DNA of 64,000 nucleotides, taken from the IMG/VR virus record IMGVR_UViG_3300026078_000017, positions 248,001 through 312,000 of that record; one strand, written 5' to 3'. The notes beneath the pieces were generated by a model that worked only from the letters and a program-made list of their open reading frames with translations, did not search any database and was not told the origin of the DNA. Shown here one piece after another: positions 7,973 through 53,568 of this stretch (positions within the stretch are counted from its first letter, which is position 1; every line of letters starts with the position of its first letter). The translations under genes and the position numbers were made by a program.

Positions 7973-8257
7973 TCAGGCATCCGAAGGATCCCAGGAAAGA
8001 CGCATCGAGGTTGCCAGCCCCCAGTTCCGCGCCTGACACAGGAAAATCCTGTGAAGCGCCTTAGCGGTGTCTCCACCCTTGCCGACGATCATGGCGAGCA
8101 TCGCACGCGGGGCAACGATGTCCACGATCAGTTCACCCTCGCACGTGGGATTCTGGTGAACGCCGATGGACACCGAGTCCGGATCGTTCACGAGAGCAAG
8201 AAGCGTATCTTCCACAAGGTCACCGAAATCCTCGAAAAGCGTCTGACTGTTGCTCAT
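7973..8257 (-). CDS. khpA: KH-domain RNA-binding protein, KhpA/YlqC-like
   Basis: LVxxLLALVNDPDSV N-terminus and IVGKGGDTAKAL GxxG loop; own promoter and terminator. Confidence 0.85.
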   Translation of the reverse strand: MSNSQTLFEDFGDLVEDTLLALVNDPDSVSIGVHQNPTCEGELIVDIVAPRAMLAMIVGKGGDTAKALHRIFLCQARNWGLATSMRLSWDPSDA

Positions 8258-8655: not shown

Positions 8656-8727
8656 TGGGCCATCGGGGTAACGATCCCCGTTCGTCGGATTAAAAGTCCG
8701 ATGCTTCACCATTAAAGCTTATAGCCC
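8656..8727 (-). tRNA. tRNA-Lys (UUU)
   Basis: Full cloverleaf GGGCTAT/ATGGCCC; anticodon arm TCGGA-CTTTTAA-TCCGA; atypical T-loop ATCGTTA; no encoded CCA. Confidence 0.9.
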
Positions 8728-9065
8728 TAAATCACCAAAACACCAGCATGAATCTCACCGTGACAATTAGAGCATACCAAAACGCACTTGTCAAGCTCTT
8801 CTTTTACTCGTTTCCACGACAGAGCCCAATTGCCGCTTATTTGAAATTCCTTGGTTGAGGGATCGAGATGATGAAAATGTAATGACTGTTTACATTTACT
8901 ATACCCGCAAACAATACATGAATCACCTTTGTAAGCGAAGCACTGTCGTGCTCTTTCTTTACGCCTGGCGTTGACAAGACAGGTATTACACTGCGTTTTG
9001 GTATGGCCTGCTTTTTTACTATAGCTATATGTGCGAGTGCATTGTGAACATTGATTCATGTTCAC
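8727..9065 (-). CDS. HNH homing endonuclease
   Basis: CxxC pairs, LHFHHLDP..K...KCVLVCSNCHGEIH. Confidence 0.9.
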   Translation of the reverse strand: MNMNQCSQCTRTYSYSKKAGHTKTQCNTCLVNARRKERARQCFAYKGDSCIVCGYSKCKQSLHFHHLDPSTKEFQISGNWALSWKRVKEELDKCVLVCSNCHGEIHAGVLVI

Positions 9066-9075
9066 AATTTAGATG

Positions 9076-9119
9076 AAGGCTAGAGCAATGTCTCACTCTG
9101 CCAACTGAGCTAACGCCTC
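9076..9119 (-). pseudogene. 5' tRNA fragment
   Basis: GAGGCGT-TAGCTCAGTTGGCAGAG acceptor strand and D-arm; no T-arm follows. Confidence 0.5.
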
Positions 9120-9134
9120 GAAAGAAGTTAAGTT

Positions 9135-9240
9135 AAGACACGTGGCAGTTTTGATTACCCAGGTACTGCCAGACCTTTTTGACAAAGTGGCTCACAGGGG
9201 ACACATTCCCACGACAAGTTATGTTGTCGTCCACCCGTCC
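9135..9240 (-). ncRNA. putative structured ncRNA / tRNA-operon leader
   Basis: Downstream of promoter 9245-9272; hairpins ACGACAA/TTGTCGT and TGGCAGT/ACTGCCA. Confidence 0.35.
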
Positions 9241-9260
9241 ATCTACTTTAGCAGAAAGAA

Positions 9261-9320
9261 GTGATGAAGCAAGTAGGAAGGGACGCAGCCTGGTGCTTGC
9301 CAACCTACTCGCCTCATCAC
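9261..9320 (-). ncRNA. putative ~60 nt hairpin RNA
   Basis: 17-bp stem GTGATGAGGCGAGTAGG/CCTACTTGCTTCATCAC just after promoter 9328-9355. Confidence 0.45.
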
Positions 9321-9434
9321 AAAGAACACTTTATCACAAAACCCTAAAGGGTCAAGAGAAAAGATTGGCTGTTTATCCTCCCCGCAGCCAAGGATCACGG
9401 GACACTTTCGTATCAACCGTGAGGAGTCTTTGTG

Positions 9435-9620
9435 TCAGATCGACTCGATGAAAAGCTCGATCTGATTCTGTTGTCCGGGCGTTGCCCCTGGAACTTCTGG
9501 CATCACACGACCATGCGTGTGATGCTCGCATGCTGCCGCAACCCATGCGCGACGTTCTGCGGTGTTCGGAATGAGACTGCGAAGGAAGGTCAGACCGGGG
9601 TGAACCGTTTCGTTTTCCAT
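9435..9620 (-). CDS. hypothetical protein
   Basis: Own promoter at ~9627-9654. Confidence 0.6.
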   Translation of the reverse strand: MENETVHPGLTFLRSLIPNTAERRAWVAAACEHHTHGRVMPEVPGATPGQQNQIELFIESI

Positions 9621-9665
9621 TTGAATATCCTAGCAGGCTGAAGGATTTTGTCAAGAAGATTTGTT

Positions 9666-9790
9666 GTTGTTGGCTTGAACCGGCGCACACAAGGCAAGAC
9701 AAGAGTTTCACGTGTCACTCGCTCCCACGAGTAAAAACGCTAGGCTTCTGTCAGGGGAGATCCCCATATGCGCCCATTCAAACCAACAAC
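9666..9790 (-). ncRNA. putative ~125 nt structured ncRNA
   Basis: ~25-bp closing stem with G-U pairs on minus strand; promoter TTGACA(9825-9820)..TGCTAAAGT. Confidence 0.55.
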
Positions 9791-9976
9791 ACTCTAGACT
9801 TTAGCACCAACTTAGTTTCTGTCAAGACCTTTGTGACCTTACAACCCCGATTTATTCCTCGCACCCAAACACATTAAAGGCATTTGACATATTCGTCTGT
9901 CATAGCCCAACGTGTTGTCGGGACCATACGAGGCAGAATCTCAGGTCACAAAAAGAAGCATAGCAGAGTTTGAGGC

Positions 9977-21122: not shown

Positions 21123-21403
21123 TGGACATCCATCAAAAGACGATAACATGTGCTGTTGTCAACTTGTAGTGAATATCTTTTGTTTTCGGTGAGACTATAA
21201 ACGATTACGACATACTCACGGAAATATTGTTCCTTACCGCTAGAGGAAAGCCATCGAGCCCTTTCTGTTAGCTCCTTTGGTTCATCCACGACCAAGTAGG
21301 TCAGTTTCTTACTGTCACCAAGGAATTGGAATATGTCACCCATTTTCAGTGGGTGACTCTTGAACTGAAACTCTCCATCGCCCTCAAGGAAGTTAAATGG
21401 CAT
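21119..21403 (-). CDS. small SH3/KOW-like protein (GD family)
   Basis: LKMGDIF...YLVVDEP. Confidence 0.7.
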   Translation of the reverse strand: MPFNFLEGDGEFQFKSHPLKMGDIFQFLGDSKKLTYLVVDEPKELTERARWLSSSGKEQYFREYVVIVYSLTENKRYSLQVDNSTCYRLLMDVQ

Positions 21404-21635
21404 TCATTTCTTCCCCTGTTTCGCCTGCCCACACACAGTTTGTCTCCAAAAAGTGTTTTCGGACTCGTGATCGTCTGTTTAGACTAAGGTCCCAAATCAA
21501 GTAGTAGTCCACTGCATATTCCTCATATGTGGCTTCCACGGTCTCGGAGCAAATCTGCTCTAAGACCAAGTAATAGTGCGTTTGGGACAAGTTTGACACA
21601 ACATCCCCACGTTGATATTTGAACCTAGAAGTCAT
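21393..21635 (-). CDS. small SH3/KOW-like protein (GD family)
   Basis: FKYQRGDVV...YLVLE...IWDL. Confidence 0.75.
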   Translation of the reverse strand: MTSRFKYQRGDVVSNLSQTHYYLVLEQICSETVEATYEEYAVDYYLIWDLSLNRRSRVRKHFLETNCVWAGETGEEMNAI

Positions 21636-22735: not shown

Positions 22736-22990
22736 GTGGCCTTTAATTTTCTTCAGGAAACAATTGAAGTCGGAGACATGCTCAAGTGGCAATATATGCC
22801 AAACGGACTACCAGAGTATTTTCTTGTGGTTTCCGCATCATCGATGATAGTCACCGAAAATCAGTTTAATCTCAGGTTTTTCTGTGAGATTGGAATCCAG
22901 GTCTTAGACTTGAAGACTTCACATGTTGAGGTTGACTTGGTGATTGACTCAACAAATCAAGCTTATTGGACTAAGGTTTATCCAACCTAG
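22736..22990 (+). CDS. small SH3/KOW-like protein (GD family)
   Basis: IEVGDMLKW...FLVV...VLDL. Confidence 0.7.
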   Translation: MAFNFLQETIEVGDMLKWQYMPNGLPEYFLVVSASSMIVTENQFNLRFFCEIGIQVLDLKTSHVEVDLVIDSTNQAYWTKVYPT

Positions 22991-23204
22991 ACATCAGAAG
23001 GTATTTCTTCTGGTAGTCATCTTGATACATGTTGAAGTCGTGAAATTGTCTTGTAGTGAGGTTGACACAGGTAGCTCGAATGCTACCTCGACTTTCATGG
23101 TCAACAGCCAAAACAAGCCAACAGTGCATCGGATTAACGGGATTTAATGGAACCGGATTGAAGTACCGGAACAAATCACCGACAATCGGATATCTGACTG
23201 TCAT
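22971..23204 (-). CDS. small SH3/KOW-like protein (GD family)
   Basis: PIVGDLF...WLVL...LMSR. Confidence 0.75.
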   Translation of the reverse strand: MTVRYPIVGDLFRYFNPVPLNPVNPMHCWLVLAVDHESRGSIRATCVNLTTRQFHDFNMYQDDYQKKYLLMSRLDKP

Positions 23205-23532: not shown

Positions 23533-23824
23533 CTGTTGCCTGCATCTCAATCATGGTACGCTTTGATTCCGAAATGGTGATCTTTCGAGTTATGTTATCT
23601 TTGGTCAATATTGTCATTTGAACCCACTTCTTGCATCGTTTGTGGATTTCAAGAACAAGGTAATACGAAAACTCAGGCATGTTCCTTTGCCAGGATTGCG
23701 TGGCATAGTCCCAAGAAATGCCTTTGTGTTTTTTACGAACAAGCCATCCTTCCTGGACTTTTTGCGTGTCGAATAAAATGAACATGTGTATGTCAGACTT
23801 TAGCACCGAACCCATAGAGATCAA
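23504..23824 (-). CDS. small SH3-like protein (GD family, divergent)
   Basis: MGSVL...YYLVLE. Confidence 0.6.
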   Translation of the reverse strand: MISMGSVLKSDIHMFILFDTQKVQEGWLVRKKHKGISWDYATQSWQRNMPEFSYYLVLEIHKRCKKWVQMTILTKDNITRKITISESKRTMIEMQATDDTQNPSGW

Positions 23825-23828
23825 ATGG

Positions 23829-23863
23829 AAAAGGATGGAACCCCATTTCGGTGTTCCACCCTT
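23829..23863 (-). terminator. intrinsic terminator of the 24 kb ncRNA unit
   Basis: AAGGGTGGAAC...GTTCCATCC-TTTT on minus strand. Confidence 0.7.
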
Positions 23864-24190
23864 CTCAGCAGATTATTGCGACTTTCGACATTGCTGGCAC
23901 TTGTCTAAAGCCTAACTGACTTCGGTCCAGCCCCGGTCAGCGTAACAGCCTCGCTTATCTATGAGCACAGTTGTTTCTCTATTATCTTAATTAGAGGGTT
24001 GCTAGTTTATTGGTTTGAGTGAGGGAACTATGTTCCTGAGCTGAATGCACCGAGCCTGCTCGTAATCGACCCTACTTGCCTAAAATTAGGGTGGCTTTCA
24101 TGCCGACTACCAAGGACTTTATGTGCGCACATACACCTAGGGAGCGTCCTCCAAGGTCAGGTTAGGTGCATTCAACTCAGGAACATCATG
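23864..24190 (-). ncRNA. putative promoter- and terminator-bounded structured ncRNA(s)
   Basis: ORF-free; promoter TTGACA(24223-24218)-16bp-TACAGT; 22-bp inverted repeat 24030-24051/24165-24186. Confidence 0.6.
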
Positions 24191-24219
24191 AACTTACTGT
24201 AGCAAGACTTTTGGAAGTG

Positions 24220-24543
24220 TCAAGCTGTTTCCTGCTCGGTCTGCTTGAGCCAGAGACACGAGTTTGCGTCCACACCCTTGACGATGAACGTCACGTGATC
24301 GACGGAGCACTCACGCGGATACATGGTCACATCCGTAGGCTGGATGTTGAAGTGTGCGGCAACAACCGGAATCAGACGACTCACCACCTTGCGATAGGCC
24401 GTAGACTGACCAATATTTGCCATCTCCGCGTACTGGTCGCCCGTAAGAGCCACACGAACACGACCATTCTTGCGCGGTCGACCCTTCATGCCGGTCTGCG
24501 AGGGAAGCGAAGTGGTCTGCTCAAGAGAAAGAAGCGTCGTCAT
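24220..24543 (-). CDS. hypothetical protein with AT-hook-like motif
   Basis: KGRPRK; GC-rich codons; own promoter. Confidence 0.75.
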   Translation of the reverse strand: MTTLLSLEQTTSLPSQTGMKGRPRKNGRVRVALTGDQYAEMANIGQSTAYRKVVSRLIPVVAAHFNIQPTDVTMYPRECSVDHVTFIVKGVDANSCLWLKQTEQETA

Positions 24544-24618: not shown

Positions 24619-24849
24619 TCACTCAGTCCTAGACAAAATTTTGTAAAACCTTATTTGATTCGGCCAGATATGAAAAGATCTTGCAAGACCTGCATAGTTG
24701 TCAGACAGAAAAAAGGCATGCCACACACGACAACTTTCTCGCCATCCTAAATCCTTTAATAGCAAAACCCGATAATAACCAGTGTCATAGTCAACAATGT
24801 CACCAACTCGAAATCTTTCAATGTCTTCAAGGTCTTCTTGATTATTCAC
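24619..24849 (-). CDS. small SH3/KOW-like protein (GD family)
   Basis: FRVGDIVD...VLLL...ILSR. Confidence 0.7.
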   Translation of the reverse strand: MNNQEDLEDIERFRVGDIVDYDTGYYRVLLLKDLGWRESCRVWHAFFLSDNYAGLARSFHIWPNQIRFYKILSRTE

Positions 24850-25121
24850 TGGTTATCCTCAGACAACAAAAAATATTCATGAGAACGGACATTCCCAATC
24901 CACCAACACTCACTGATGGTTTTGTGAAACAGGACTGGAATCTGATTGATTATCCAGCCTTTTCCCTTCCATCTTTCTGTTGCACGACTGTAATCGTCAA
25001 CAGTGAAATTTTCAAGCACCAAATAAGTGACTTTGATGAGTGAGCCATCAGACATGGTCTGACGGAGGAAAATCAAATCACCTGTTTTAGGTGGTCGAGT
25101 TAGAGTCTTCATCACATTCAT
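24846..25121 (-). CDS. small SH3/KOW-like protein (GD family)
   Basis: PKTGDLIF...YLVLE. Confidence 0.7.
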   Translation of the reverse strand: MNVMKTLTRPPKTGDLIFLRQTMSDGSLIKVTYLVLENFTVDDYSRATERWKGKGWIINQIPVLFHKTISECWWIGNVRSHEYFLLSEDNQ

Positions 25122-26220: not shown

Positions 26221-26916
26221 TTATCTCGTGGTCGTCAATGGATATCTTTCAAGTCGGTGGCGAATGTCCTCACGACCATAAGGACGTTCCCGTGGAATCA
26301 AGGGATTTACCGTACAGGTGTCATCCTCGATTTCAATCGGCACAAAGGAAATTCGGAAGAACGTCCGTTCGGTTCCCAAAGGAATGTTGTTTGGACGCCG
26401 ATGAATCACATAAGGGTCAATGCCATAAATGTGCTCAGCACGCAAGGTGCAAATGTTCGACTCATCTGCCACATCCTGGAAATACTGGTGGATGTTGTGA
26501 CGCAGTGGGTCAAAGTCCTCAGGAAGAGTGACTTCCTGGTCAAGCAGTTCTGTGGGATACCTGTTTGTCCAAATGTAGTTCTGTTCCGGATTGTGGGGAA
26601 CCCGCATGGAGAAGCCATCCACGTGCCACAGGTCATCCGTAACCGTGTTGATGACACCATGACGAACGGTGACATAAACAAAGGGATTGTAGATCTCCTG
26701 AGTAAGCTGAACCGTGTTGCAAGCCACGATTGCCGTACGAAGCCACTCCAGTTCTTTCGGAATCTGAAATCCCTCTGACCAAGGATTGCGGACCATCATT
26801 CGCAGGATCATCTGTGGGCCAGCAGGAAGCTCCAAGTCCAACGTTCGACCAATAAGCACAGCGGGCTGCCCAAAGGTTTTGCGAGGCGTCAGAAGGTCAT
26901 GTGCTCGTTCGTACAT
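26221..26916 (-). CDS. putative 2OG-Fe(II) oxygenase-like protein
   Basis: WHVD (HxD), distal H (VIHRRP), RTFFRIS. Confidence 0.6.
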   Translation of the reverse strand: MYERAHDLLTPRKTFGQPAVLIGRTLDLELPAGPQMILRMMVRNPWSEGFQIPKELEWLRTAIVACNTVQLTQEIYNPFVYVTVRHGVINTVTDDLWHVDGFSMRVPHNPEQNYIWTNRYPTELLDQEVTLPEDFDPLRHNIHQYFQDVADESNICTLRAEHIYGIDPYVIHRRPNNIPLGTERTFFRISFVPIEIEDDTCTVNPLIPRERPYGREDIRHRLERYPLTTTR

Positions 26917-35487: not shown

Positions 35488-36039
35488 CTAATATTTATTT
35501 GCTCGTTCTTTCCGTGTGTAGGTTGGCAAAAGAAGTGTATTATCACGATACGCAAATACCCAACCATTACATTTTTGAATGCGATTTTTGCACATACTAA
35601 CAATAGCTTCATTAGGAATATTACAGGCCCGAGATGCTTCACGAATACCGTTAAATTCCTTTATTTCTTGTGTGGCAATATTGTAACCATGAACAGGTTT
35701 CCGTTGATCTTTTTTAATCTTCATCACAACTGGAATTCCAGTCCACCTGTCTGAAACTGCTTTCCTTAGATTATAGCACGATCTCTGATTGTCATAAAAA
35801 AGGTTCAACCAGTCCTGTTCTCTCAATTCAAGATTTTCAATACAAGAAATTTCCAAGATTTGGGTACTGAAATGTTCAGTACCTGACTTATTGAAGTCAC
35901 GTTGTAAAAATATGTTTGGATGCCGATTCCTTCGTAAGTCTCTAAAATGCCTATGCATTCGTGCCTCATATGAACGTGTACTTCCGACATAAAATCGACC
36001 ATTCAAATTGTTGTTGATAACGTAAACGCAAGAAATCAT
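35488..36039 (-). CDS. GIY-YIG homing endonuclease with NUMOD1-like C-terminus
   Basis: CVYVI...FYVGST...R...H.N..LQ...E; EFNGIREASR; AT-rich and antisense to neighbours. Confidence 0.9.
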   Translation of the reverse strand: MISCVYVINNNLNGRFYVGSTRSYEARMHRHFRDLRRNRHPNIFLQRDFNKSGTEHFSTQILEISCIENLELREQDWLNLFYDNQRSCYNLRKAVSDRWTGIPVVMKIKKDQRKPVHGYNIATQEIKEFNGIREASRACNIPNEAIVSMCKNRIQKCNGWVFAYRDNTLLLPTYTRKERANKY

Positions 36040-36178
36040 AGAGTTATTGTTGTTGCACACATGATTTGATGGGTAAAGAAGAAAGAAAGAAGTTGACTTC
36101 CTAAGCTCAGGTGCTAAACCAAGGTAATCGGAAAGCGGAACCCCGCTAACAAACAAAAGAAGAAAAGAGGATACAGTA

Positions 36179-36457
36179 ATGAAGATTGGAATGCATGTTT
36201 CGGTGATCGAGTCGGGTGCGCGTGGTGTGCTTGTCGGCCTTGAGGGTGAGACGGCTACGGTTCGTCTCCGCAATGAGGACAAGACGCTTTCGGCCAGCGA
36301 GAGCACGTATGCGGTGAGTGCACTCAAGGGTGAGAAGGGTCGTCCGGTTCGTCTGGATCGCCTTGCCGCTCAGGATGCCACGGTGACGGCTGAGGCTCCC
36401 GCTGCGGAGACGGCTGTCGAGTCGGAGACGTCCACGGATGAGGTTTCGGCTGCCTGA
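36179..36457 (+). CDS. small SH3-like KGRP protein
   Basis: MKIGMHV...GETATVRL...KGRPVRL; strong leader. Confidence 0.8.
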   Translation: MKIGMHVSVIESGARGVLVGLEGETATVRLRNEDKTLSASESTYAVSALKGEKGRPVRLDRLAAQDATVTAEAPAAETAVESETSTDEVSAA

Positions 36458-39553: not shown

Positions 39554-39590
39554 TCCTTGACGCCATCTTGAAATCTGGTAAGATACTCCT

Positions 39591-39893
39591 ATGCAAACGC
39601 TCAAGCTTGAAGAGAAGGTCATCAACGTGGTCGACTACAACGATCTCGATGATTTCATCAGTTTTCACTACGGAGTCCCTTTCGAGGTTGTTGCCGACCA
39701 GGAAATGAACAACTATTCTTCCAAGCTGATCAAGGTCGAGAAGGAAAACCTTGATCAGTGGCAACAGGAAGATTTGAATTACCTCAAGGAATCGGGGGAC
39801 TATAAGGGTGGGTCACTTCGTACACTTTTGGCAGATCTGTGCAACCGTGGACACCTCGCACCCGGAAACTACCTGATTCAGGTGTTCTGGTGA
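39591..39893 (+). CDS. conserved phage hypothetical protein
   Basis: LLADLCNRGHLAPGNYLIQVFW; own promoter. Confidence 0.8.
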   Translation: MQTLKLEEKVINVVDYNDLDDFISFHYGVPFEVVADQEMNNYSSKLIKVEKENLDQWQQEDLNYLKESGDYKGGSLRTLLADLCNRGHLAPGNYLIQVFW

Positions 39894-51791: not shown

Positions 51792-52442
51792 ATGTTTTGG
51801 ATTTACGCGCTTCTTGATGAAAAAGGTTTTCCTAGATATGTTGGAAAAACCTATGACTTGAAAGAACGACTGAGAAATCATCTCAAAGAGAAAGGTCGTT
51901 GTCATCGAATCTGTTGGCTTAAATCTATGAAATCTAAGGGACTCAATCCCACATTGATTGCATTGGATTCTAAGCCAACAGAGCAAGAAGCTTTGGATGA
52001 AGAAGTTTTTTTGATATCTTATTTTCGTTATTTGGGTGCTGATTTAACCAACGGAACAGATGGTGGTGAAGGAATCTCTGGACACAAACATTCCTTAGAA
52101 ACAAGAAACAAAATGTCCAAAAGTCGGATAGGACATATAACTTCACCTGAAACTCGACGTAAGTTGTCTGAATCAAACAAAGGTAAACCACATAAAGGTG
52201 GATGGCATCATAATGAAACAAGTAAGAAAAAAATAACAGGTAGAAAACCAAGGCAAATTCAAGACTCGCATGGAAAAGTCTTTGCGTCTGTTCGTGAAGC
52301 TGCTAAAGTGTTTGGTGTAAGCATCGATCAAATCAAATATGCCCTTCAAAAGGGCACTCCCACCCACAAAGTACCAAGGTTACATTATGTTGAAGGTTCA
52401 AGAATATCTACTGACGCACACATTGAACGATTTAGCTCGTGA
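51792..52442 (+). CDS. GIY-YIG homing endonuclease with NUMOD3 repeats
   Basis: WIYAL...RYVGKT...R; LTNGTDGGEG; HSLETRNKMS / SPETRRKLS. Confidence 0.9.
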   Translation: MFWIYALLDEKGFPRYVGKTYDLKERLRNHLKEKGRCHRICWLKSMKSKGLNPTLIALDSKPTEQEALDEEVFLISYFRYLGADLTNGTDGGEGISGHKHSLETRNKMSKSRIGHITSPETRRKLSESNKGKPHKGGWHHNETSKKKITGRKPRQIQDSHGKVFASVREAAKVFGVSIDQIKYALQKGTPTHKVPRLHYVEGSRISTDAHIERFSS

Positions 52443-53568
52443 ACATGGCGTCTATTCTCGCTTCAGCACGAAAAATCCTTTGAAGTGGTCTCTAAATTAC
52501 GACCAGATCGAAGCGAAGGATGCAGATCCGATCGCTCAGGAGTGTCGTGGTCTGGTTCTTGCGACGGAAGAGCCGTTGGCAGACATGGATCCGACGCTTG
52601 GCGCAATGGGCGTTACGGTTGGCGAGACGAAGATTCGTGGTCTTCCCATGGGACGGTTTTTCAACTACGGCCAGGGCTCTGCCGCTACGGTTGACCTGGA
52701 TTCGCCTGACACGCGCTTCTGTGAGAAGCTCGACGGAACCCTGTGCATCATGTATTGGGATCGTCACCTTGGAGAGTGGTCCATTGCCACGCGATCTGTT
52801 CCAGACGCTGACCTTCCTATGGATGGTTTTGGCAATCAGACGTTCACGGATCTCTTCTGGAAGGCTTTTAAGGCTTCTGGTGGAATGATTTCGCAGTTGG
52901 ACTATGCACGTGGGTGGCATACCTTCTGTTTCGAGCTTTGCACGCCCGATAACCAGATTGTGGTCAAGTACCCGGACTACAAGGTTTATCTCCTGGCTGC
53001 TCGTGAGAACGAGACCGGAATCAACATGGATCCTCAGCCTTGGGCGGTCCAGATGTCGGTGGAGTGTGCTCCGACGTATCGTTTCGGCTCCACGGACGAA
53101 ATGCTGAATTTCGTTTCCTCGCGAAATCCCTTGGCTCACGAGGGAATCGTCGTTGTTGACAAGGACTTCAATCGAGTCAAGGTCAAGAATGCGGGATATC
53201 TCGCTTACAACAAGATCAAGGACTCTGTTGCAAAGTCTCCTCGTGCGGTAATGGAGATCGTTCTTCTTGGCAAGGAAGACGACGTTATGCCGCTCGTTCC
53301 CGAGCATGTGCAGAAGGTCATCCTTGACACCAAGGATCGCCTGGCGGCATTTTTGCGAGTCACGGACGAGGAATACACGGCTTGCTATCACACGGACCGT
53401 AAGACGTTTGCTCTTGCCATTCAGGCGGGTTCTGGTAACATGGGACCACAGATGGCACGATGGTCGGGAAAGTGTGCTTCTACCAAGGACTGGATCTTCT
53501 CTCAGCGGAAGGATGGAAATTGGTCAGATGGGTTCCTTGACTCGCTTATGCGTATGTGTAAGGAATAA
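52387..53568 (+). CDS. T4 Rnl1-like RNA ligase
   Basis: RFFNY, EKLDGT (motif I), FEL..P.NQIVV.Y, EGIVV (IV), RVKVK (V). Confidence 0.9.
   Translation: MLKVQEYLLTHTLNDLAREHGVYSRFSTKNPLKWSLNYDQIEAKDADPIAQECRGLVLATEEPLADMDPTLGAMGVTVGETKIRGLPMGRFFNYGQGSAATVDLDSPDTRFCEKLDGTLCIMYWDRHLGEWSIATRSVPDADLPMDGFGNQTFTDLFWKAFKASGGMISQLDYARGWHTFCFELCTPDNQIVVKYPDYKVYLLAARENETGINMDPQPWAVQMSVECAPTYRFGSTDEMLNFVSSRNPLAHEGIVVVDKDFNRVKVKNAGYLAYNKIKDSVAKSPRAVMEIVLLGKEDDVMPLVPEHVQKVILDTKDRLAAFLRVTDEEYTACYHTDRKTFALAIQAGSGNMGPQMARWSGKCASTKDWIFSQRKDGNWSDGFLDSLMRMCKE

What the first reader, a model, noticed from the sequence alone, without database searches (positions are those of the whole stretch)
23829..24223. ORF-free ~360 nt transcription unit with a 22-bp closing stem: candidate novel ncRNA
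Seen (minus strand): promoter TTGACA-16bp-TACAGT, followed within a few nt by ATGTTCCTGAGTTGAATGCACC, which pairs with GGTGCATTCAGCTCAGGAACAT about 113 nt later (one G-U). Internal hairpins follow, then a second hairpin-rich domain (23864-24020) and an intrinsic terminator. No ORF of 60 aa or more spans it in an otherwise densely coding genome. Inference: one or two functional structured RNAs, possibly a 6S-like polymerase decoy, protein sponge or antitoxin mimic.
Basis: partly seen in the sequence, partly recalled or inferred. Interest (0 to 1): 0.8.

Follow-up and report, generated by a model that had tools for sequence, protein, structure and literature searches.

The report
New phage structured RNA gene family
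The ORF-free stretch is a real, conserved small RNA gene of an uncultured 320-kb jumbo phage, with its own early promoter, a long closing helix kept by compensatory mutations in related phages, and its own terminator; it belongs to no described RNA family and its function is unknown.

Summary
On the minus strand there is a sigma-70 extended -10 promoter (24223-24196), a 22-bp helix with one G-U (24186-24165 with 24051-24030, 113 nt apart), a terminator hairpin (23866-23828) and no coding signal. The promoter belongs to a family of 29 sites in the window against 2 expected by chance.

Sequence searches found no relatives at first. Going through neighbouring proteins found two orthologous RNAs in other uncultured phages (L038, L040) and a related RNA type at the same position in three more (L027, L031, L036).

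Across the three orthologues 86.5% of cells pair and 17 of 52 pairs changed on both sides; 0 of 500 shuffles reached these values, and slid controls gave at most 6 such pairs. One U-G wobble in the helix is kept in all three. In all relatives the unit has its own promoter and terminator and is not a leader, and no reading frame is conserved.

No Rfam family matches, and the 6S, Y RNA/YrlA, ToxI and retron tests fail. The inner 113 nt and the 3' half of this copy fold no better than shuffles.

Best reading: a stand-alone early phage ncRNA whose conserved helix and first hairpin dock a protein, possibly the arginine-rich protein encoded just upstream. The helix may also be cut by RNase III. Function remains inferred.

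The parts
24196..24223 (-). Early sigma-70-type promoter with extended -10 (TTGACA, N16 with TG, TACAGT). Its -35 element overlaps the stop codon of the upstream gene.
   Evidence: It belongs to a promoter family with 29 sites against 2.07 expected. The same promoter type precedes the orthologous RNAs.
24165..24186 (-). P1 5' arm. It begins about 3-4 nt from the predicted transcription start. It holds the invariant blocks UUCCUG and GAAU and the U of the conserved U-G wobble.
   Evidence: Conservation and covariation in alignment A8.
24141..24152 (-). hp1, a 4-bp hairpin with core GGACGC. The stem covaries: GGAG/CUCC here, GAGG/CCUC in L040, UUGG/CCAA in L038, AGGG/CCCU in type B.
   Evidence: (helix 2).
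24052..24164 (-). The 113-nt insert enclosed by P1 (hp1, hp2 and further hairpins). It is weakly structured in this copy but well formed in L038.
   Evidence: z = -0.31 here. Helices 2-4 are 71-92% paired across orthologues. The L038 unit folds with z = -9.96.
24030..24051 (-). P1 3' arm, with invariant blocks AUUC and CAGGAA.
23970..24029 (-). C/A-rich, unstructured linker found only in this phage. It is absent from L040 and L038 and contains CCCUC/CCUCU motifs.
23894..23955 (-). Conserved core of domain 2, a nested hairpin shared with L040 at about 75% identity and with compensatory changes. L038 lacks it.
23828..23866 (-). Intrinsic terminator hairpin (14 pairs, 2 G-U, 11-nt loop) ending in UUUU. 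The L038 terminator resembles it.
24220..24543 (-). Upstream gene for a 107-aa protein with a conserved arginine-rich N-terminus (SLPSQxGxKGRPRKxGRVRV) and a C-terminal FIVKG motif. It is a candidate protein partner of the RNA.
   Evidence: An RNA unit follows this gene in 6 of 6 closer loci but not in 2 more distant ones. Its fold was not identified.
9665..9825 (-). 'RNA2', a possible distant paralogue. It has the same promoter type (9825-9798), a closing helix of 16+9 bp starting at the transcription start, and a 5' arm sharing 13 of 17 nt with the P1 arm.
   Evidence: z = -8.05 on the minus strand against -6.09 on the plus strand. Covariance model R3 does not detect it, so relatedness is unproven.

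Best explanation
The region is a stand-alone, early-expressed gene for a structured non-coding RNA. It belongs to a family, not previously described, that is carried by a group of uncultured jumbo phages.

Host RNA polymerase starts at the extended -10 promoter. The first nucleotides of the transcript are locked into a long closing helix (P1, 20-30 bp). P1 encloses a multi-hairpin insert of about 115 nt that begins with a small conserved hairpin (hp1, core GGACGC). An intrinsic terminator ends the RNA. This copy also carries an accessory 3' domain.

Shown here: the promoter family, the absence of coding signal, orthologues at the same genomic position, compensatory changes that keep P1 and hp1, invariant sequence blocks and a conserved U-G wobble inside P1, and the stand-alone promoter-to-terminator layout in the relatives.

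Inferred: P1 keeps specific bases and a wobble rather than just pairing. The helix and hp1 therefore most likely act as a sequence-specific docking site for a protein. The first candidate is the arginine-rich small protein encoded immediately upstream, which would make the pair an early phage RNA-protein particle. A perfect helix of 20 bp or more is also a textbook RNase III substrate. Cleavage there could separate the 5' domain from the 3' domain. The cellular target is unknown.
For: Promoter and coding
- The promoter is 10 of 12 to consensus and belongs to a motif family with 29 sites against 2.07 expected.
- Codon log-likelihood is negative in all three frames across the unit.

Synteny
- The flanking proteins are homologous in L027 (43% identity, E 2e-25 and 5e-12).
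- An ORF-free promoter-to-terminator unit follows the upstream gene directly in window, L040, L027, L031 and L036. In L038 it follows after one inserted gene.

Orthologues and covariation
- The orthologues are L038:1771-1968 and L040:1497-1810. They share the arm blocks GUUCCUG..GAAU and AUUC..CAGGAA.
- On alignment A8, 52 pairs are 86.5% paired against 77% in shuffles. 17 pairs changed on both sides against 7.8 in shuffles. 0 of 500 shuffles reach either value. Slid-partner controls give 32-49% paired and at most 6 such pairs.
- Helix P1 has 29 pairs, 10 of them with double changes, and is 90.8% paired.

Strand
- The U-G pair at alignment columns 16/155 is kept in all three sequences.
- Model R3 scores 145-161 bits on the promoter strand and 33-42 bits on the other strand.

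Other support
- The L038 RNA folds with z = -9.96.
- The type B RNAs at the same position show a 12-bp long-range closing helix with compensatory changes, and the same hp1.
- In relatives the next gene has its own promoter (L038, L040) or is convergent (L027, L031, L036), so the unit is not a leader.
- No reading frame, start codon or peptide is conserved.
Against: - No transcript evidence exists. No RNA run was listed, and the only run holding this DNA is the source metagenome.
- Only three type A sequences are available, so the covariation statistics rest on few independent events. The alignment was made by MAFFT and the structure was derived from the same sequences.
- In this copy the inner insert and domain 2 are no more stable than shuffles.
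- The protein-partner idea rests on gene adjacency alone. The loci were found through that protein. Two more distant homologues (L041, L042) have no recognisable RNA next to them. The protein's fold gave no hint. The complex predictor does not handle RNA.
- In this phage, unlike the relatives, no promoter was found between the terminator and the next genes. A cis role here is therefore not excluded.
Confidence: 0.62

Rival explanations
1. Cis-acting leader or conditional terminator. The RNA is the 5' leader of the downstream block of small genes (23824 to about 20970). The helix and terminator would form a timing device in the manner of lambda nut, HK022 put or pR'-tR', or an RNase III-processed leader.
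For: - In this phage no strict early promoter lies between the terminator and the genes from 23824 downwards.
- The first gene starts 5-14 nt after the U-tract and has no Shine-Dalgarno sequence.
- The upstream operon reads into the unit with no terminator in between.
- The terminator's U-tract is short.
Against: - In all five relatives the RNA unit is separated from the next gene by a promoter of that gene's own (L038, L040), or the next gene is convergent (L027, L031, L036).
- The conserved part therefore cannot be a leader.
- No alternative antiterminator pairing is conserved.
Confidence: 0.12
2. A pure double-stranded RNA element: an RNase III processing site or decoy whose only function is the long duplex. 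The enclosed and following sequence would be passenger.
For: - A perfect 22-bp helix here, and 20 to more than 30 bp in L038.
- The inner sequence of this copy is not significantly structured.
- Phage early transcripts processed by host RNase III are established knowledge for T7 and lambda.
Against: - Invariant base blocks and a conserved U-G wobble inside the helix, plus the conserved hairpin hp1 and further covarying inner helices, go beyond what a generic duplex would need.
- The L040 helix carries an internal loop.
Confidence: 0.1
3. A known kind of protein-binding RNA: 6S-like polymerase decoy, Y RNA/YrlA-like Ro partner, or antitoxin mimic.
For: - A long closing helix that involves the 5' end resembles 6S and Y RNAs.
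- A related phage locus (L011) has a weak YrlA-like hit inside a 19-26 bp helix.
Against: - No Rfam hit for this RNA or its orthologues at E up to 5-10.
- No T-arm or D-arm motifs.
- No TROVE/Ro60 domain among 120 window ORFs.
- The fold is a multi-branch junction, not a 6S rod.
- No tandem repeats.
Confidence: 0.05
4. A DNA-level element: an invertible segment, a pair of operator sites, or a miniature transposable element bounded by 22-bp inverted repeats.
For: Near-perfect inverted repeats 113 bp apart sit directly downstream of a promoter. The plus strand folds almost as well.
Against: - The arm differences are compensated between phages, and the one mismatch is a U-G on the transcribed strand in all three orthologues. 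On the other strand it would be an A-C mismatch.
- Model scores are strongly strand-asymmetric.
- No recombinase or transposase domain was found among the 120 window ORFs scanned.
- No inverted variant appears in the source assembly, although contigs would hide rare variants.
- No target-site duplication.
Confidence: 0.03
5. A small-peptide gene: the 34-aa ORF at 24132-24028, or the 5-codon leaderless mini-ORF at the transcription start.
For: - An ATG lies exactly 6 nt after the -10 element, the same spacing as in the leaderless genes of this phage.
- A 34-aa ORF ends exactly at the end of the 3' arm.
Against: - Neither start codon is conserved: L038 and L040 begin AAAAAG and UCUUUG.
- The longest ORFs of the three orthologues are unrelated in sequence.
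- Insertions and deletions between orthologues are not multiples of three.
- The codon score is negative.
Confidence: 0.02

Closest known systems
Bacterial and phage Y RNAs / YrlA (Rfam RF02553; PMC4201824)
   Same: A non-coding RNA of roughly 100-200 nt with a long helix involving the 5' end that closes a multi-hairpin module. Y RNAs act as protein-docking scaffolds and occur in phages. A related jumbo-phage locus (L011) has a weak YrlA-like element inside a 19-26 bp helix.
   Different: No covariance-model match. No tRNA-like T and D arms. No Ro60/TROVE gene in 64 kb. The helix has no bulged Ro-binding motif, and its 3' arm is internal and followed by a terminator.
6S RNA (Rfam RF00013 and related families)
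   Same: An abundant regulatory RNA with a closing helix formed by distant segments.
   Different: No Rfam hit. The covariation-supported fold is a junction with three or four hairpins, not a rod with a central open-promoter-like bubble.
RNase III processing helices of phage early transcripts (T7 R sites, lambda N leader) and of rRNA precursors
   Same: A duplex of 20 bp or more on an early transcript made by host polymerase. As with the helices that bracket rRNAs, it encloses a structured insert. This comparison rests on established knowledge and was not tested here.
   Different: Those sites lie between genes on long mRNAs. This unit has its own promoter and terminator, base-specific conservation inside the helix, and a conserved U-G wobble.
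ORF-free transcribed regions (ncRNA001-004) of jumbo phage PA5oct (PMC7318152)
   Same: Jumbo phage dependent on host polymerase, with highly transcribed ORF-free regions of 236-619 nt, of unknown function and without database relatives.
   Different: Those were defined by RNA-seq without a structure model. This one is defined by sequence, synteny and covariation without expression data. No sequence relationship was tested or found: blastn against the phage collection gave no match.
Lambda nut / HK022 put promoter-proximal RNA elements
   Same: Structured RNA directly downstream of early promoters. There may be two related copies per genome (this RNA and RNA2), and in this phage a terminator follows with promoter-less genes behind it.
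   Different: nut and put are short hairpins that act in cis. In the relatives the RNA unit is insulated from downstream genes.

Membership tests
6S RNA | Match to the Rfam 6S covariance models | tested here: not met
   No hit at E up to 10 on 23700-24350. No hit at the gathering threshold on the whole window. No hit on the orthologue loci.
6S RNA | Rod-like fold with a large central bubble between a closing stem and a terminal stem | tested here: not met
   The consensus fold is P1 closing a multi-branch junction with hp1, hp2 and further hairpins.
6S RNA | Binds the sigma-70 holoenzyme and templates product RNA | not testable with these tools
   Needs biochemistry.
Y RNA / YrlA | Match to Rfam YrlA or Y_RNA models | tested here: not met
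   No hit. Only the unrelated L011 element gives 21 bits against a gathering score of 69.
Y RNA / YrlA | tRNA-like module with T-arm and D-arm | tested here: not met
   No T-loop or D-loop motifs. ARAGORN finds nothing credible even at relaxed settings.
Y RNA / YrlA | Encoded next to a Ro60/Rsr (TROVE) gene | tested here: not met
   No TROVE hit among 120 ORFs of the 64-kb window. The rest of the 320-kb genome was not examined.
Type III antitoxin RNA (ToxI-like) or its phage mimic | Tandem direct repeats of about 34-36 nt next to an endoribonuclease toxin gene | tested here: not met
   No internal direct repeats in the self-BLAST. The neighbouring proteins have no Pfam or PHROG family.
Retron msr-msd | Inverted repeats flanking the ncRNA together with an adjacent reverse transcriptase gene | tested here: not met
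   Inverted repeats are present, but no reverse transcriptase domain was found among 120 window ORFs.
Invertible DNA segment (inverton) | Inverted repeats together with a site-specific recombinase and both orientations present in the population | tested here: inconclusive
   No recombinase domain in the window. Only the assembled orientation is seen in the source run, but contigs drop rare variants. The conserved U-G wobble and the strand-asymmetric model scores argue for RNA.
RNase III substrate | Uninterrupted RNA duplex of about 20 bp or more | tested here: met
   22 bp here and 20 bp plus an extension in L038. L040 has 9+7+4 bp with an internal loop.
RNase III substrate | Cleaved by RNase III | not testable with these tools
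   Needs in vitro cleavage or an RNase III-deficient host.
Stand-alone small RNA gene | Own promoter, own intrinsic terminator, no coding potential, conserved across genomes with structure-preserving changes | tested here: met
Stand-alone small RNA gene | A discrete transcript is detected | not testable with these tools
   No RNA run was listed for this DNA.
Lambda nut / HK022 put type antitermination element | Acts in cis on terminators upstream of dependent genes | tested here: not met
   In relatives the next gene has its own promoter or is convergent. Only this phage lacks a downstream promoter.

The most novel reading that the evidence does not exclude
The RNA and the arginine-rich small protein encoded just upstream form an early phage RNA-protein particle of a new class. 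The conserved helix, with its invariant blocks and U-G wobble, and hp1 would be the protein's docking site. The particle would bind, block or redirect a host machine such as an RNA-processing enzyme, the ribosome or an anti-phage defence sensor. Type A, type B and perhaps RNA2 would be diverged members of one fast-evolving superfamily.
Probability: 0.2. Interest if true: 0.8.

Novelty: new variant of a known kind. Interest (0 to 1): 0.6.

Why it matters
Phage-encoded non-coding RNAs are reported in transcriptome studies of jumbo phages but almost never have a structure model, relatives or a candidate partner. For example, the four ncRNAs of PA5oct have unknown function (PMC7318152).

This finding provides:
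- a family with defined boundaries;
- a fold supported by covariation;
- base-specific conservation inside a long helix;
- a conserved neighbouring gene for an arginine-rich protein.

Together these make a concrete, testable RNA-protein hypothesis for the first minutes of infection. The family could be added to RNA family databases and would improve annotation of 'gaps' in jumbo-phage genomes.

The search route also matters. Direct sequence and pattern searches all failed. The relatives appeared only by walking through neighbouring proteins.

Tried and rejected
Searches that found no relatives of the RNA
- blastn of the region against 50,697 phage records: no match.
- Exact peptide-pattern searches for both flanking proteins in IMG/VR: only the source contig.
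- Word-based search of the upstream protein alone: only itself.
- Arm-pattern scans of the viral, metagenome and genome collections: only the source phage, plus chance hits inside long ORFs that form no helix.
- Covariance models: R1 (this RNA alone), R2 (type B 5' domain) and R3 (three type A sequences) find no cross-type hits and nothing in 16 more distant phage loci.
- The link between type A, type B and RNA2 therefore rests on synteny, shared architecture and the hp1 core. Unconstrained local alignments between the types are not significant.

Hypotheses rejected
- Leaderless mini-ORF and the UGA-AUG motif: attractive in this copy but not conserved.
- Decayed paralogue gene: jackhmmer found no paralogues of the neighbouring small protein, and the seed profile matched nothing in the six frames of the region.
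- Antisense target search: within the window only chance-level matches. A duplex-energy scan timed out.

Attempts on the upstream protein
- Its resemblance to a Hin-type DNA-binding domain was seen by eye only. Pfam, the protein atlas and fold searches of a medium-confidence model (pLDDT 69.5) did not confirm it. The segment is not conserved in homologues.

Sequencing runs
- Only the source DNA run holds the region, and it shows no variants.

Full report
**Source**

The window is bases 248001-312000 of IMGVR_UViG_3300026078_000017, a 320,479-bp viral contig from a rhizosphere metagenome. It is a jumbo phage with very many small genes, an Rnl1-type RNA ligase and homing endonucleases. A neighbouring gene (26221-26916, phrog_1843) has its nearest cultured homologues in Ralstonia phage phiRSL1 (55% identity). 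Further homologues occur in Erwinia, Serratia and Xanthomonas jumbo phages.

**Observation**

- The promoter is TTGACA, 16 nt with a TG extension, then TACAGT, at 24223-24196.
- The 22-bp helix with one G-U pairs 24186-24165 with 24051-24030 across 113 nt.
- The terminator hairpin lies at 23866-23828.
- No ORF reaches 60 aa.

The promoter is not a chance match. The motif TTGACA-N13-TGnTAnnnT occurs 29 times in the window against 2.07 expected, mostly upstream of minus-strand genes in the first 30 kb. Many of these promoters are followed by a start codon 5-9 nt after the -10 element, so the early genes are largely leaderless.

A codon-usage log-likelihood trained on the phage's own genes is positive in the flanking genes. 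It is negative in all three frames from 24240 to 23850.

The whole unit folds with z = -4.99. That signal comes only from the long helix and the terminator:
- inner 113 nt, z = -0.31;
- 24029-23868, z = +0.73;
- opposite strand, z = -4.62.

**Known families**

Rfam 15 gives nothing at the gathering threshold or at E up to 10. ARAGORN finds only a tRNA-Lys elsewhere in the window.

**Search for relatives**

Direct routes failed:
- blastn against phage records;
- exact-peptide searches with the flanking proteins;
- arm-pattern scans of three collections, whose only extra hits were chance matches inside long ORFs;
- a single-sequence covariance model over 16 loci of more distant jumbo phages.

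The route that worked went through proteins. The phrog_1843 protein has relatives at 76-77% identity. Their contigs (L027-L029, L031) show the same gene order. The upstream 107-aa protein is homologous there (43% identity, E 2e-25). So is the downstream protein (E 5e-12). A profile of the upstream protein then found further homologues on short contigs: L036/L037, L038/L039 and L040.

**What lies at the syntenic position**

In every one of these six distinct loci an ORF-free unit sits downstream of the upstream-protein gene. Each unit has the same type of extended -10 promoter and an intrinsic terminator. In five loci the unit follows the gene directly. In L038 one gene lies in between.

Two of the units are clear orthologues of the RNA under study (type A).
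- L038:1771-1968 carries the arms GUUCCUGGAUUGAAUGC and GCAUUCAGUCCAGGAA. Its helix extends beyond 30 bp and the terminator follows directly. It folds with z = -9.96.
- L040:1497-1810 has a helix of 9+7+4 bp. It also has a 3' domain whose core is about 75% identical to 23955-23894, with compensatory changes.

The other three (L027, L031, L036; type B) are about 160-190 nt. They have a 12-bp long-range helix between the 5' end and the segment just before the terminator, again enclosing about 113 nt. Compensatory changes support that helix.

All types share a first hairpin with the core GGACGC, and its stem covaries.

**Covariation**

On the three type A sequences (alignment A8) the consensus structure has 52 pairs.

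| Measure | Observed | Shuffles | Slid partners |
|---|---|---|---|
| Cells forming a standard pair | 86.5% | 77.2% | 32-49% |
| Pairs changed on both sides | 17 | 7.8 | at most 6 |

None of 500 shuffles reaches either observed value.

- Helix P1 has 29 pairs. Twelve are invariant, ten have double changes, and 90.8% of its cells are paired.
- Inside P1 the blocks UUCCUG/CAGGAA and GAAU/AUUC never vary.
- That wobble fixes the strand, as do the model scores: 145-161 bits on the promoter strand against 33-42 bits on the other.

Three sequences are few. The structure was derived from the same alignment. The result is therefore strong support, not proof.

**Rivals**

*Leader or attenuator.* In this phage no promoter was found between the terminator and the next nine small genes, which would fit a leader. 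In all relatives, however, the next gene has its own promoter or is convergent. The conserved element is therefore a stand-alone gene.

*Peptide.*
- The ATG at the transcription start is not conserved.
- The 34-aa ORF has no counterpart in the orthologues.
- Insertions and deletions between orthologues break every frame.

*DNA-level inverted repeat.* The conserved wobble and the strand asymmetry argue against it. No recombinase or transposase domain was found among 120 window ORFs. The source assembly shows one orientation only, which is weak evidence.

*6S, Y RNA/YrlA, ToxI, retron.* Each fails at least one defining feature that was tested.

**Mechanism**

The shown facts are an early promoter, a 5' end locked in a long helix, base-specific conservation and a conserved wobble within that helix, a conserved small hairpin, and a terminator.

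Pairing alone would not require invariant bases. The helix and hp1 are therefore most simply read as a docking site for a protein.

The gene immediately upstream encodes a small protein whose N-terminus (SLPSQxGxKGRPRKxGRVRV) is its most conserved part. Arginine-rich segments of this kind bind RNA in other systems; that is established knowledge and was not tested here.

The adjacency holds in six of six closer loci. It does not hold in two more distant homologues. The protein's fold could not be identified. I rate this pairing at about one in three.

A perfect helix of 20 bp or more is also the canonical RNase III substrate. Cleavage would release the 5' domain from the accessory 3' domain. 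This too is inference.

**A second element**

The window holds a second promoter-proximal RNA at 9825-9665. Its helix of 16+9 bp starts at the transcription start. It is much more stable on the transcribed strand (z = -8.05, -66.7 kcal/mol) than on the other strand (z = -6.09, -52.5 kcal/mol). Its 5' arm shares 13 of 17 nt with P1. Model R3 does not detect it. An unconstrained alignment between the two is not significant. It may be a distant paralogue, but this is unproven.

**Verdict**

This is a genuine, conserved, structured non-coding RNA gene of a family not in Rfam 15. It is carried by a small group of uncultured jumbo phages, and its function is unknown. The specific functional guesses are not.

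Noticed in passing
window 9665-9825 (-): A second promoter-proximal structured RNA ('RNA2'). It has an extended -10 promoter at 9825-9798 and a closing helix of 16+9 bp. It folds with z = -8.05 and is far more stable on the transcribed strand. No Rfam match. Its 5' arm resembles the P1 arm of the RNA studied.
   Followed up: partly
window 9261-9355 (-): Another early promoter (9355-9328) is followed within a few nucleotides by a 17-bp hairpin (9320-9261, 2 G-U, 26-nt loop) in an ORF-poor stretch.
   Followed up: no
window 8656-9120 (-): A tRNA-like 5' fragment (acceptor and D-arm-like sequence near 9116-9080) is followed by an HNH endonuclease ORF (9065-8727). That ORF abuts a complete tRNA-Lys(UUU) at 8727-8656. 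This may be a tRNA gene disrupted or duplicated by a homing endonuclease.
   Followed up: no
window, e.g. 26950-26916, 5821-5787, 9654-9620, 39557-39593: Many early promoters are followed by the start codon only 5-9 nt after the -10 element. Much of the early gene set is therefore leaderless. Other genes use AAGAGG-type ribosome binding sites.
   Followed up: partly
window 7976-8257 (-): A small protein with a weak KH (KhpA/KhpB-like) RNA-binding domain match (E 1.5e-4, below the Pfam cut-off). It is encoded next to the cluster of RNA genes at 8656-9825.
   Followed up: no
window 52339-53568 (+), and unlocated ORFs of the window: RNA repair genes are present: an Rnl1-type RNA ligase, plus Pfam hits to cREC_REC (cyclic-phosphate processing) and AAA_33 (kinase) among the window ORFs. 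The same two domains occur in the related locus L027.
   Followed up: no
window 35488-36327 (-) and 51792-52442 (+): Two GIY-YIG-type homing endonuclease genes with atypical codon usage.
   Followed up: no
L011 26-225, 1283-1441 and 1990-13360: A related jumbo-phage contig carries three RNA features. One is a permuted tmRNA (104 bits). Another is an element with tRNA-like T and D arms that weakly matches YrlA (21 bits, below threshold) inside a 19-26 bp helix. The third is an array of 37 tRNA genes.
   Followed up: partly
L013 8875-8949 (-): A tRNA with a CUA anticodon, a possible amber suppressor, in a related phage contig.
   Followed up: no
L042 2124-2436 (+): Another ORF-free stretch of about 300 nt behind an early-type promoter. 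It lies in a more distant phage that carries a homologue of the arginine-rich protein. It was not recognised by the RNA models.
   Followed up: no
window, many small ORFs (e.g. 24846-25121, 24619-24849, 22971-23204, 21393-21635): By eye, dozens of 70-110-aa proteins share a loose motif (GD...YLVL). jackhmmer did not link them at E 1e-3, so the paralogy is unproven.
   Followed up: partly
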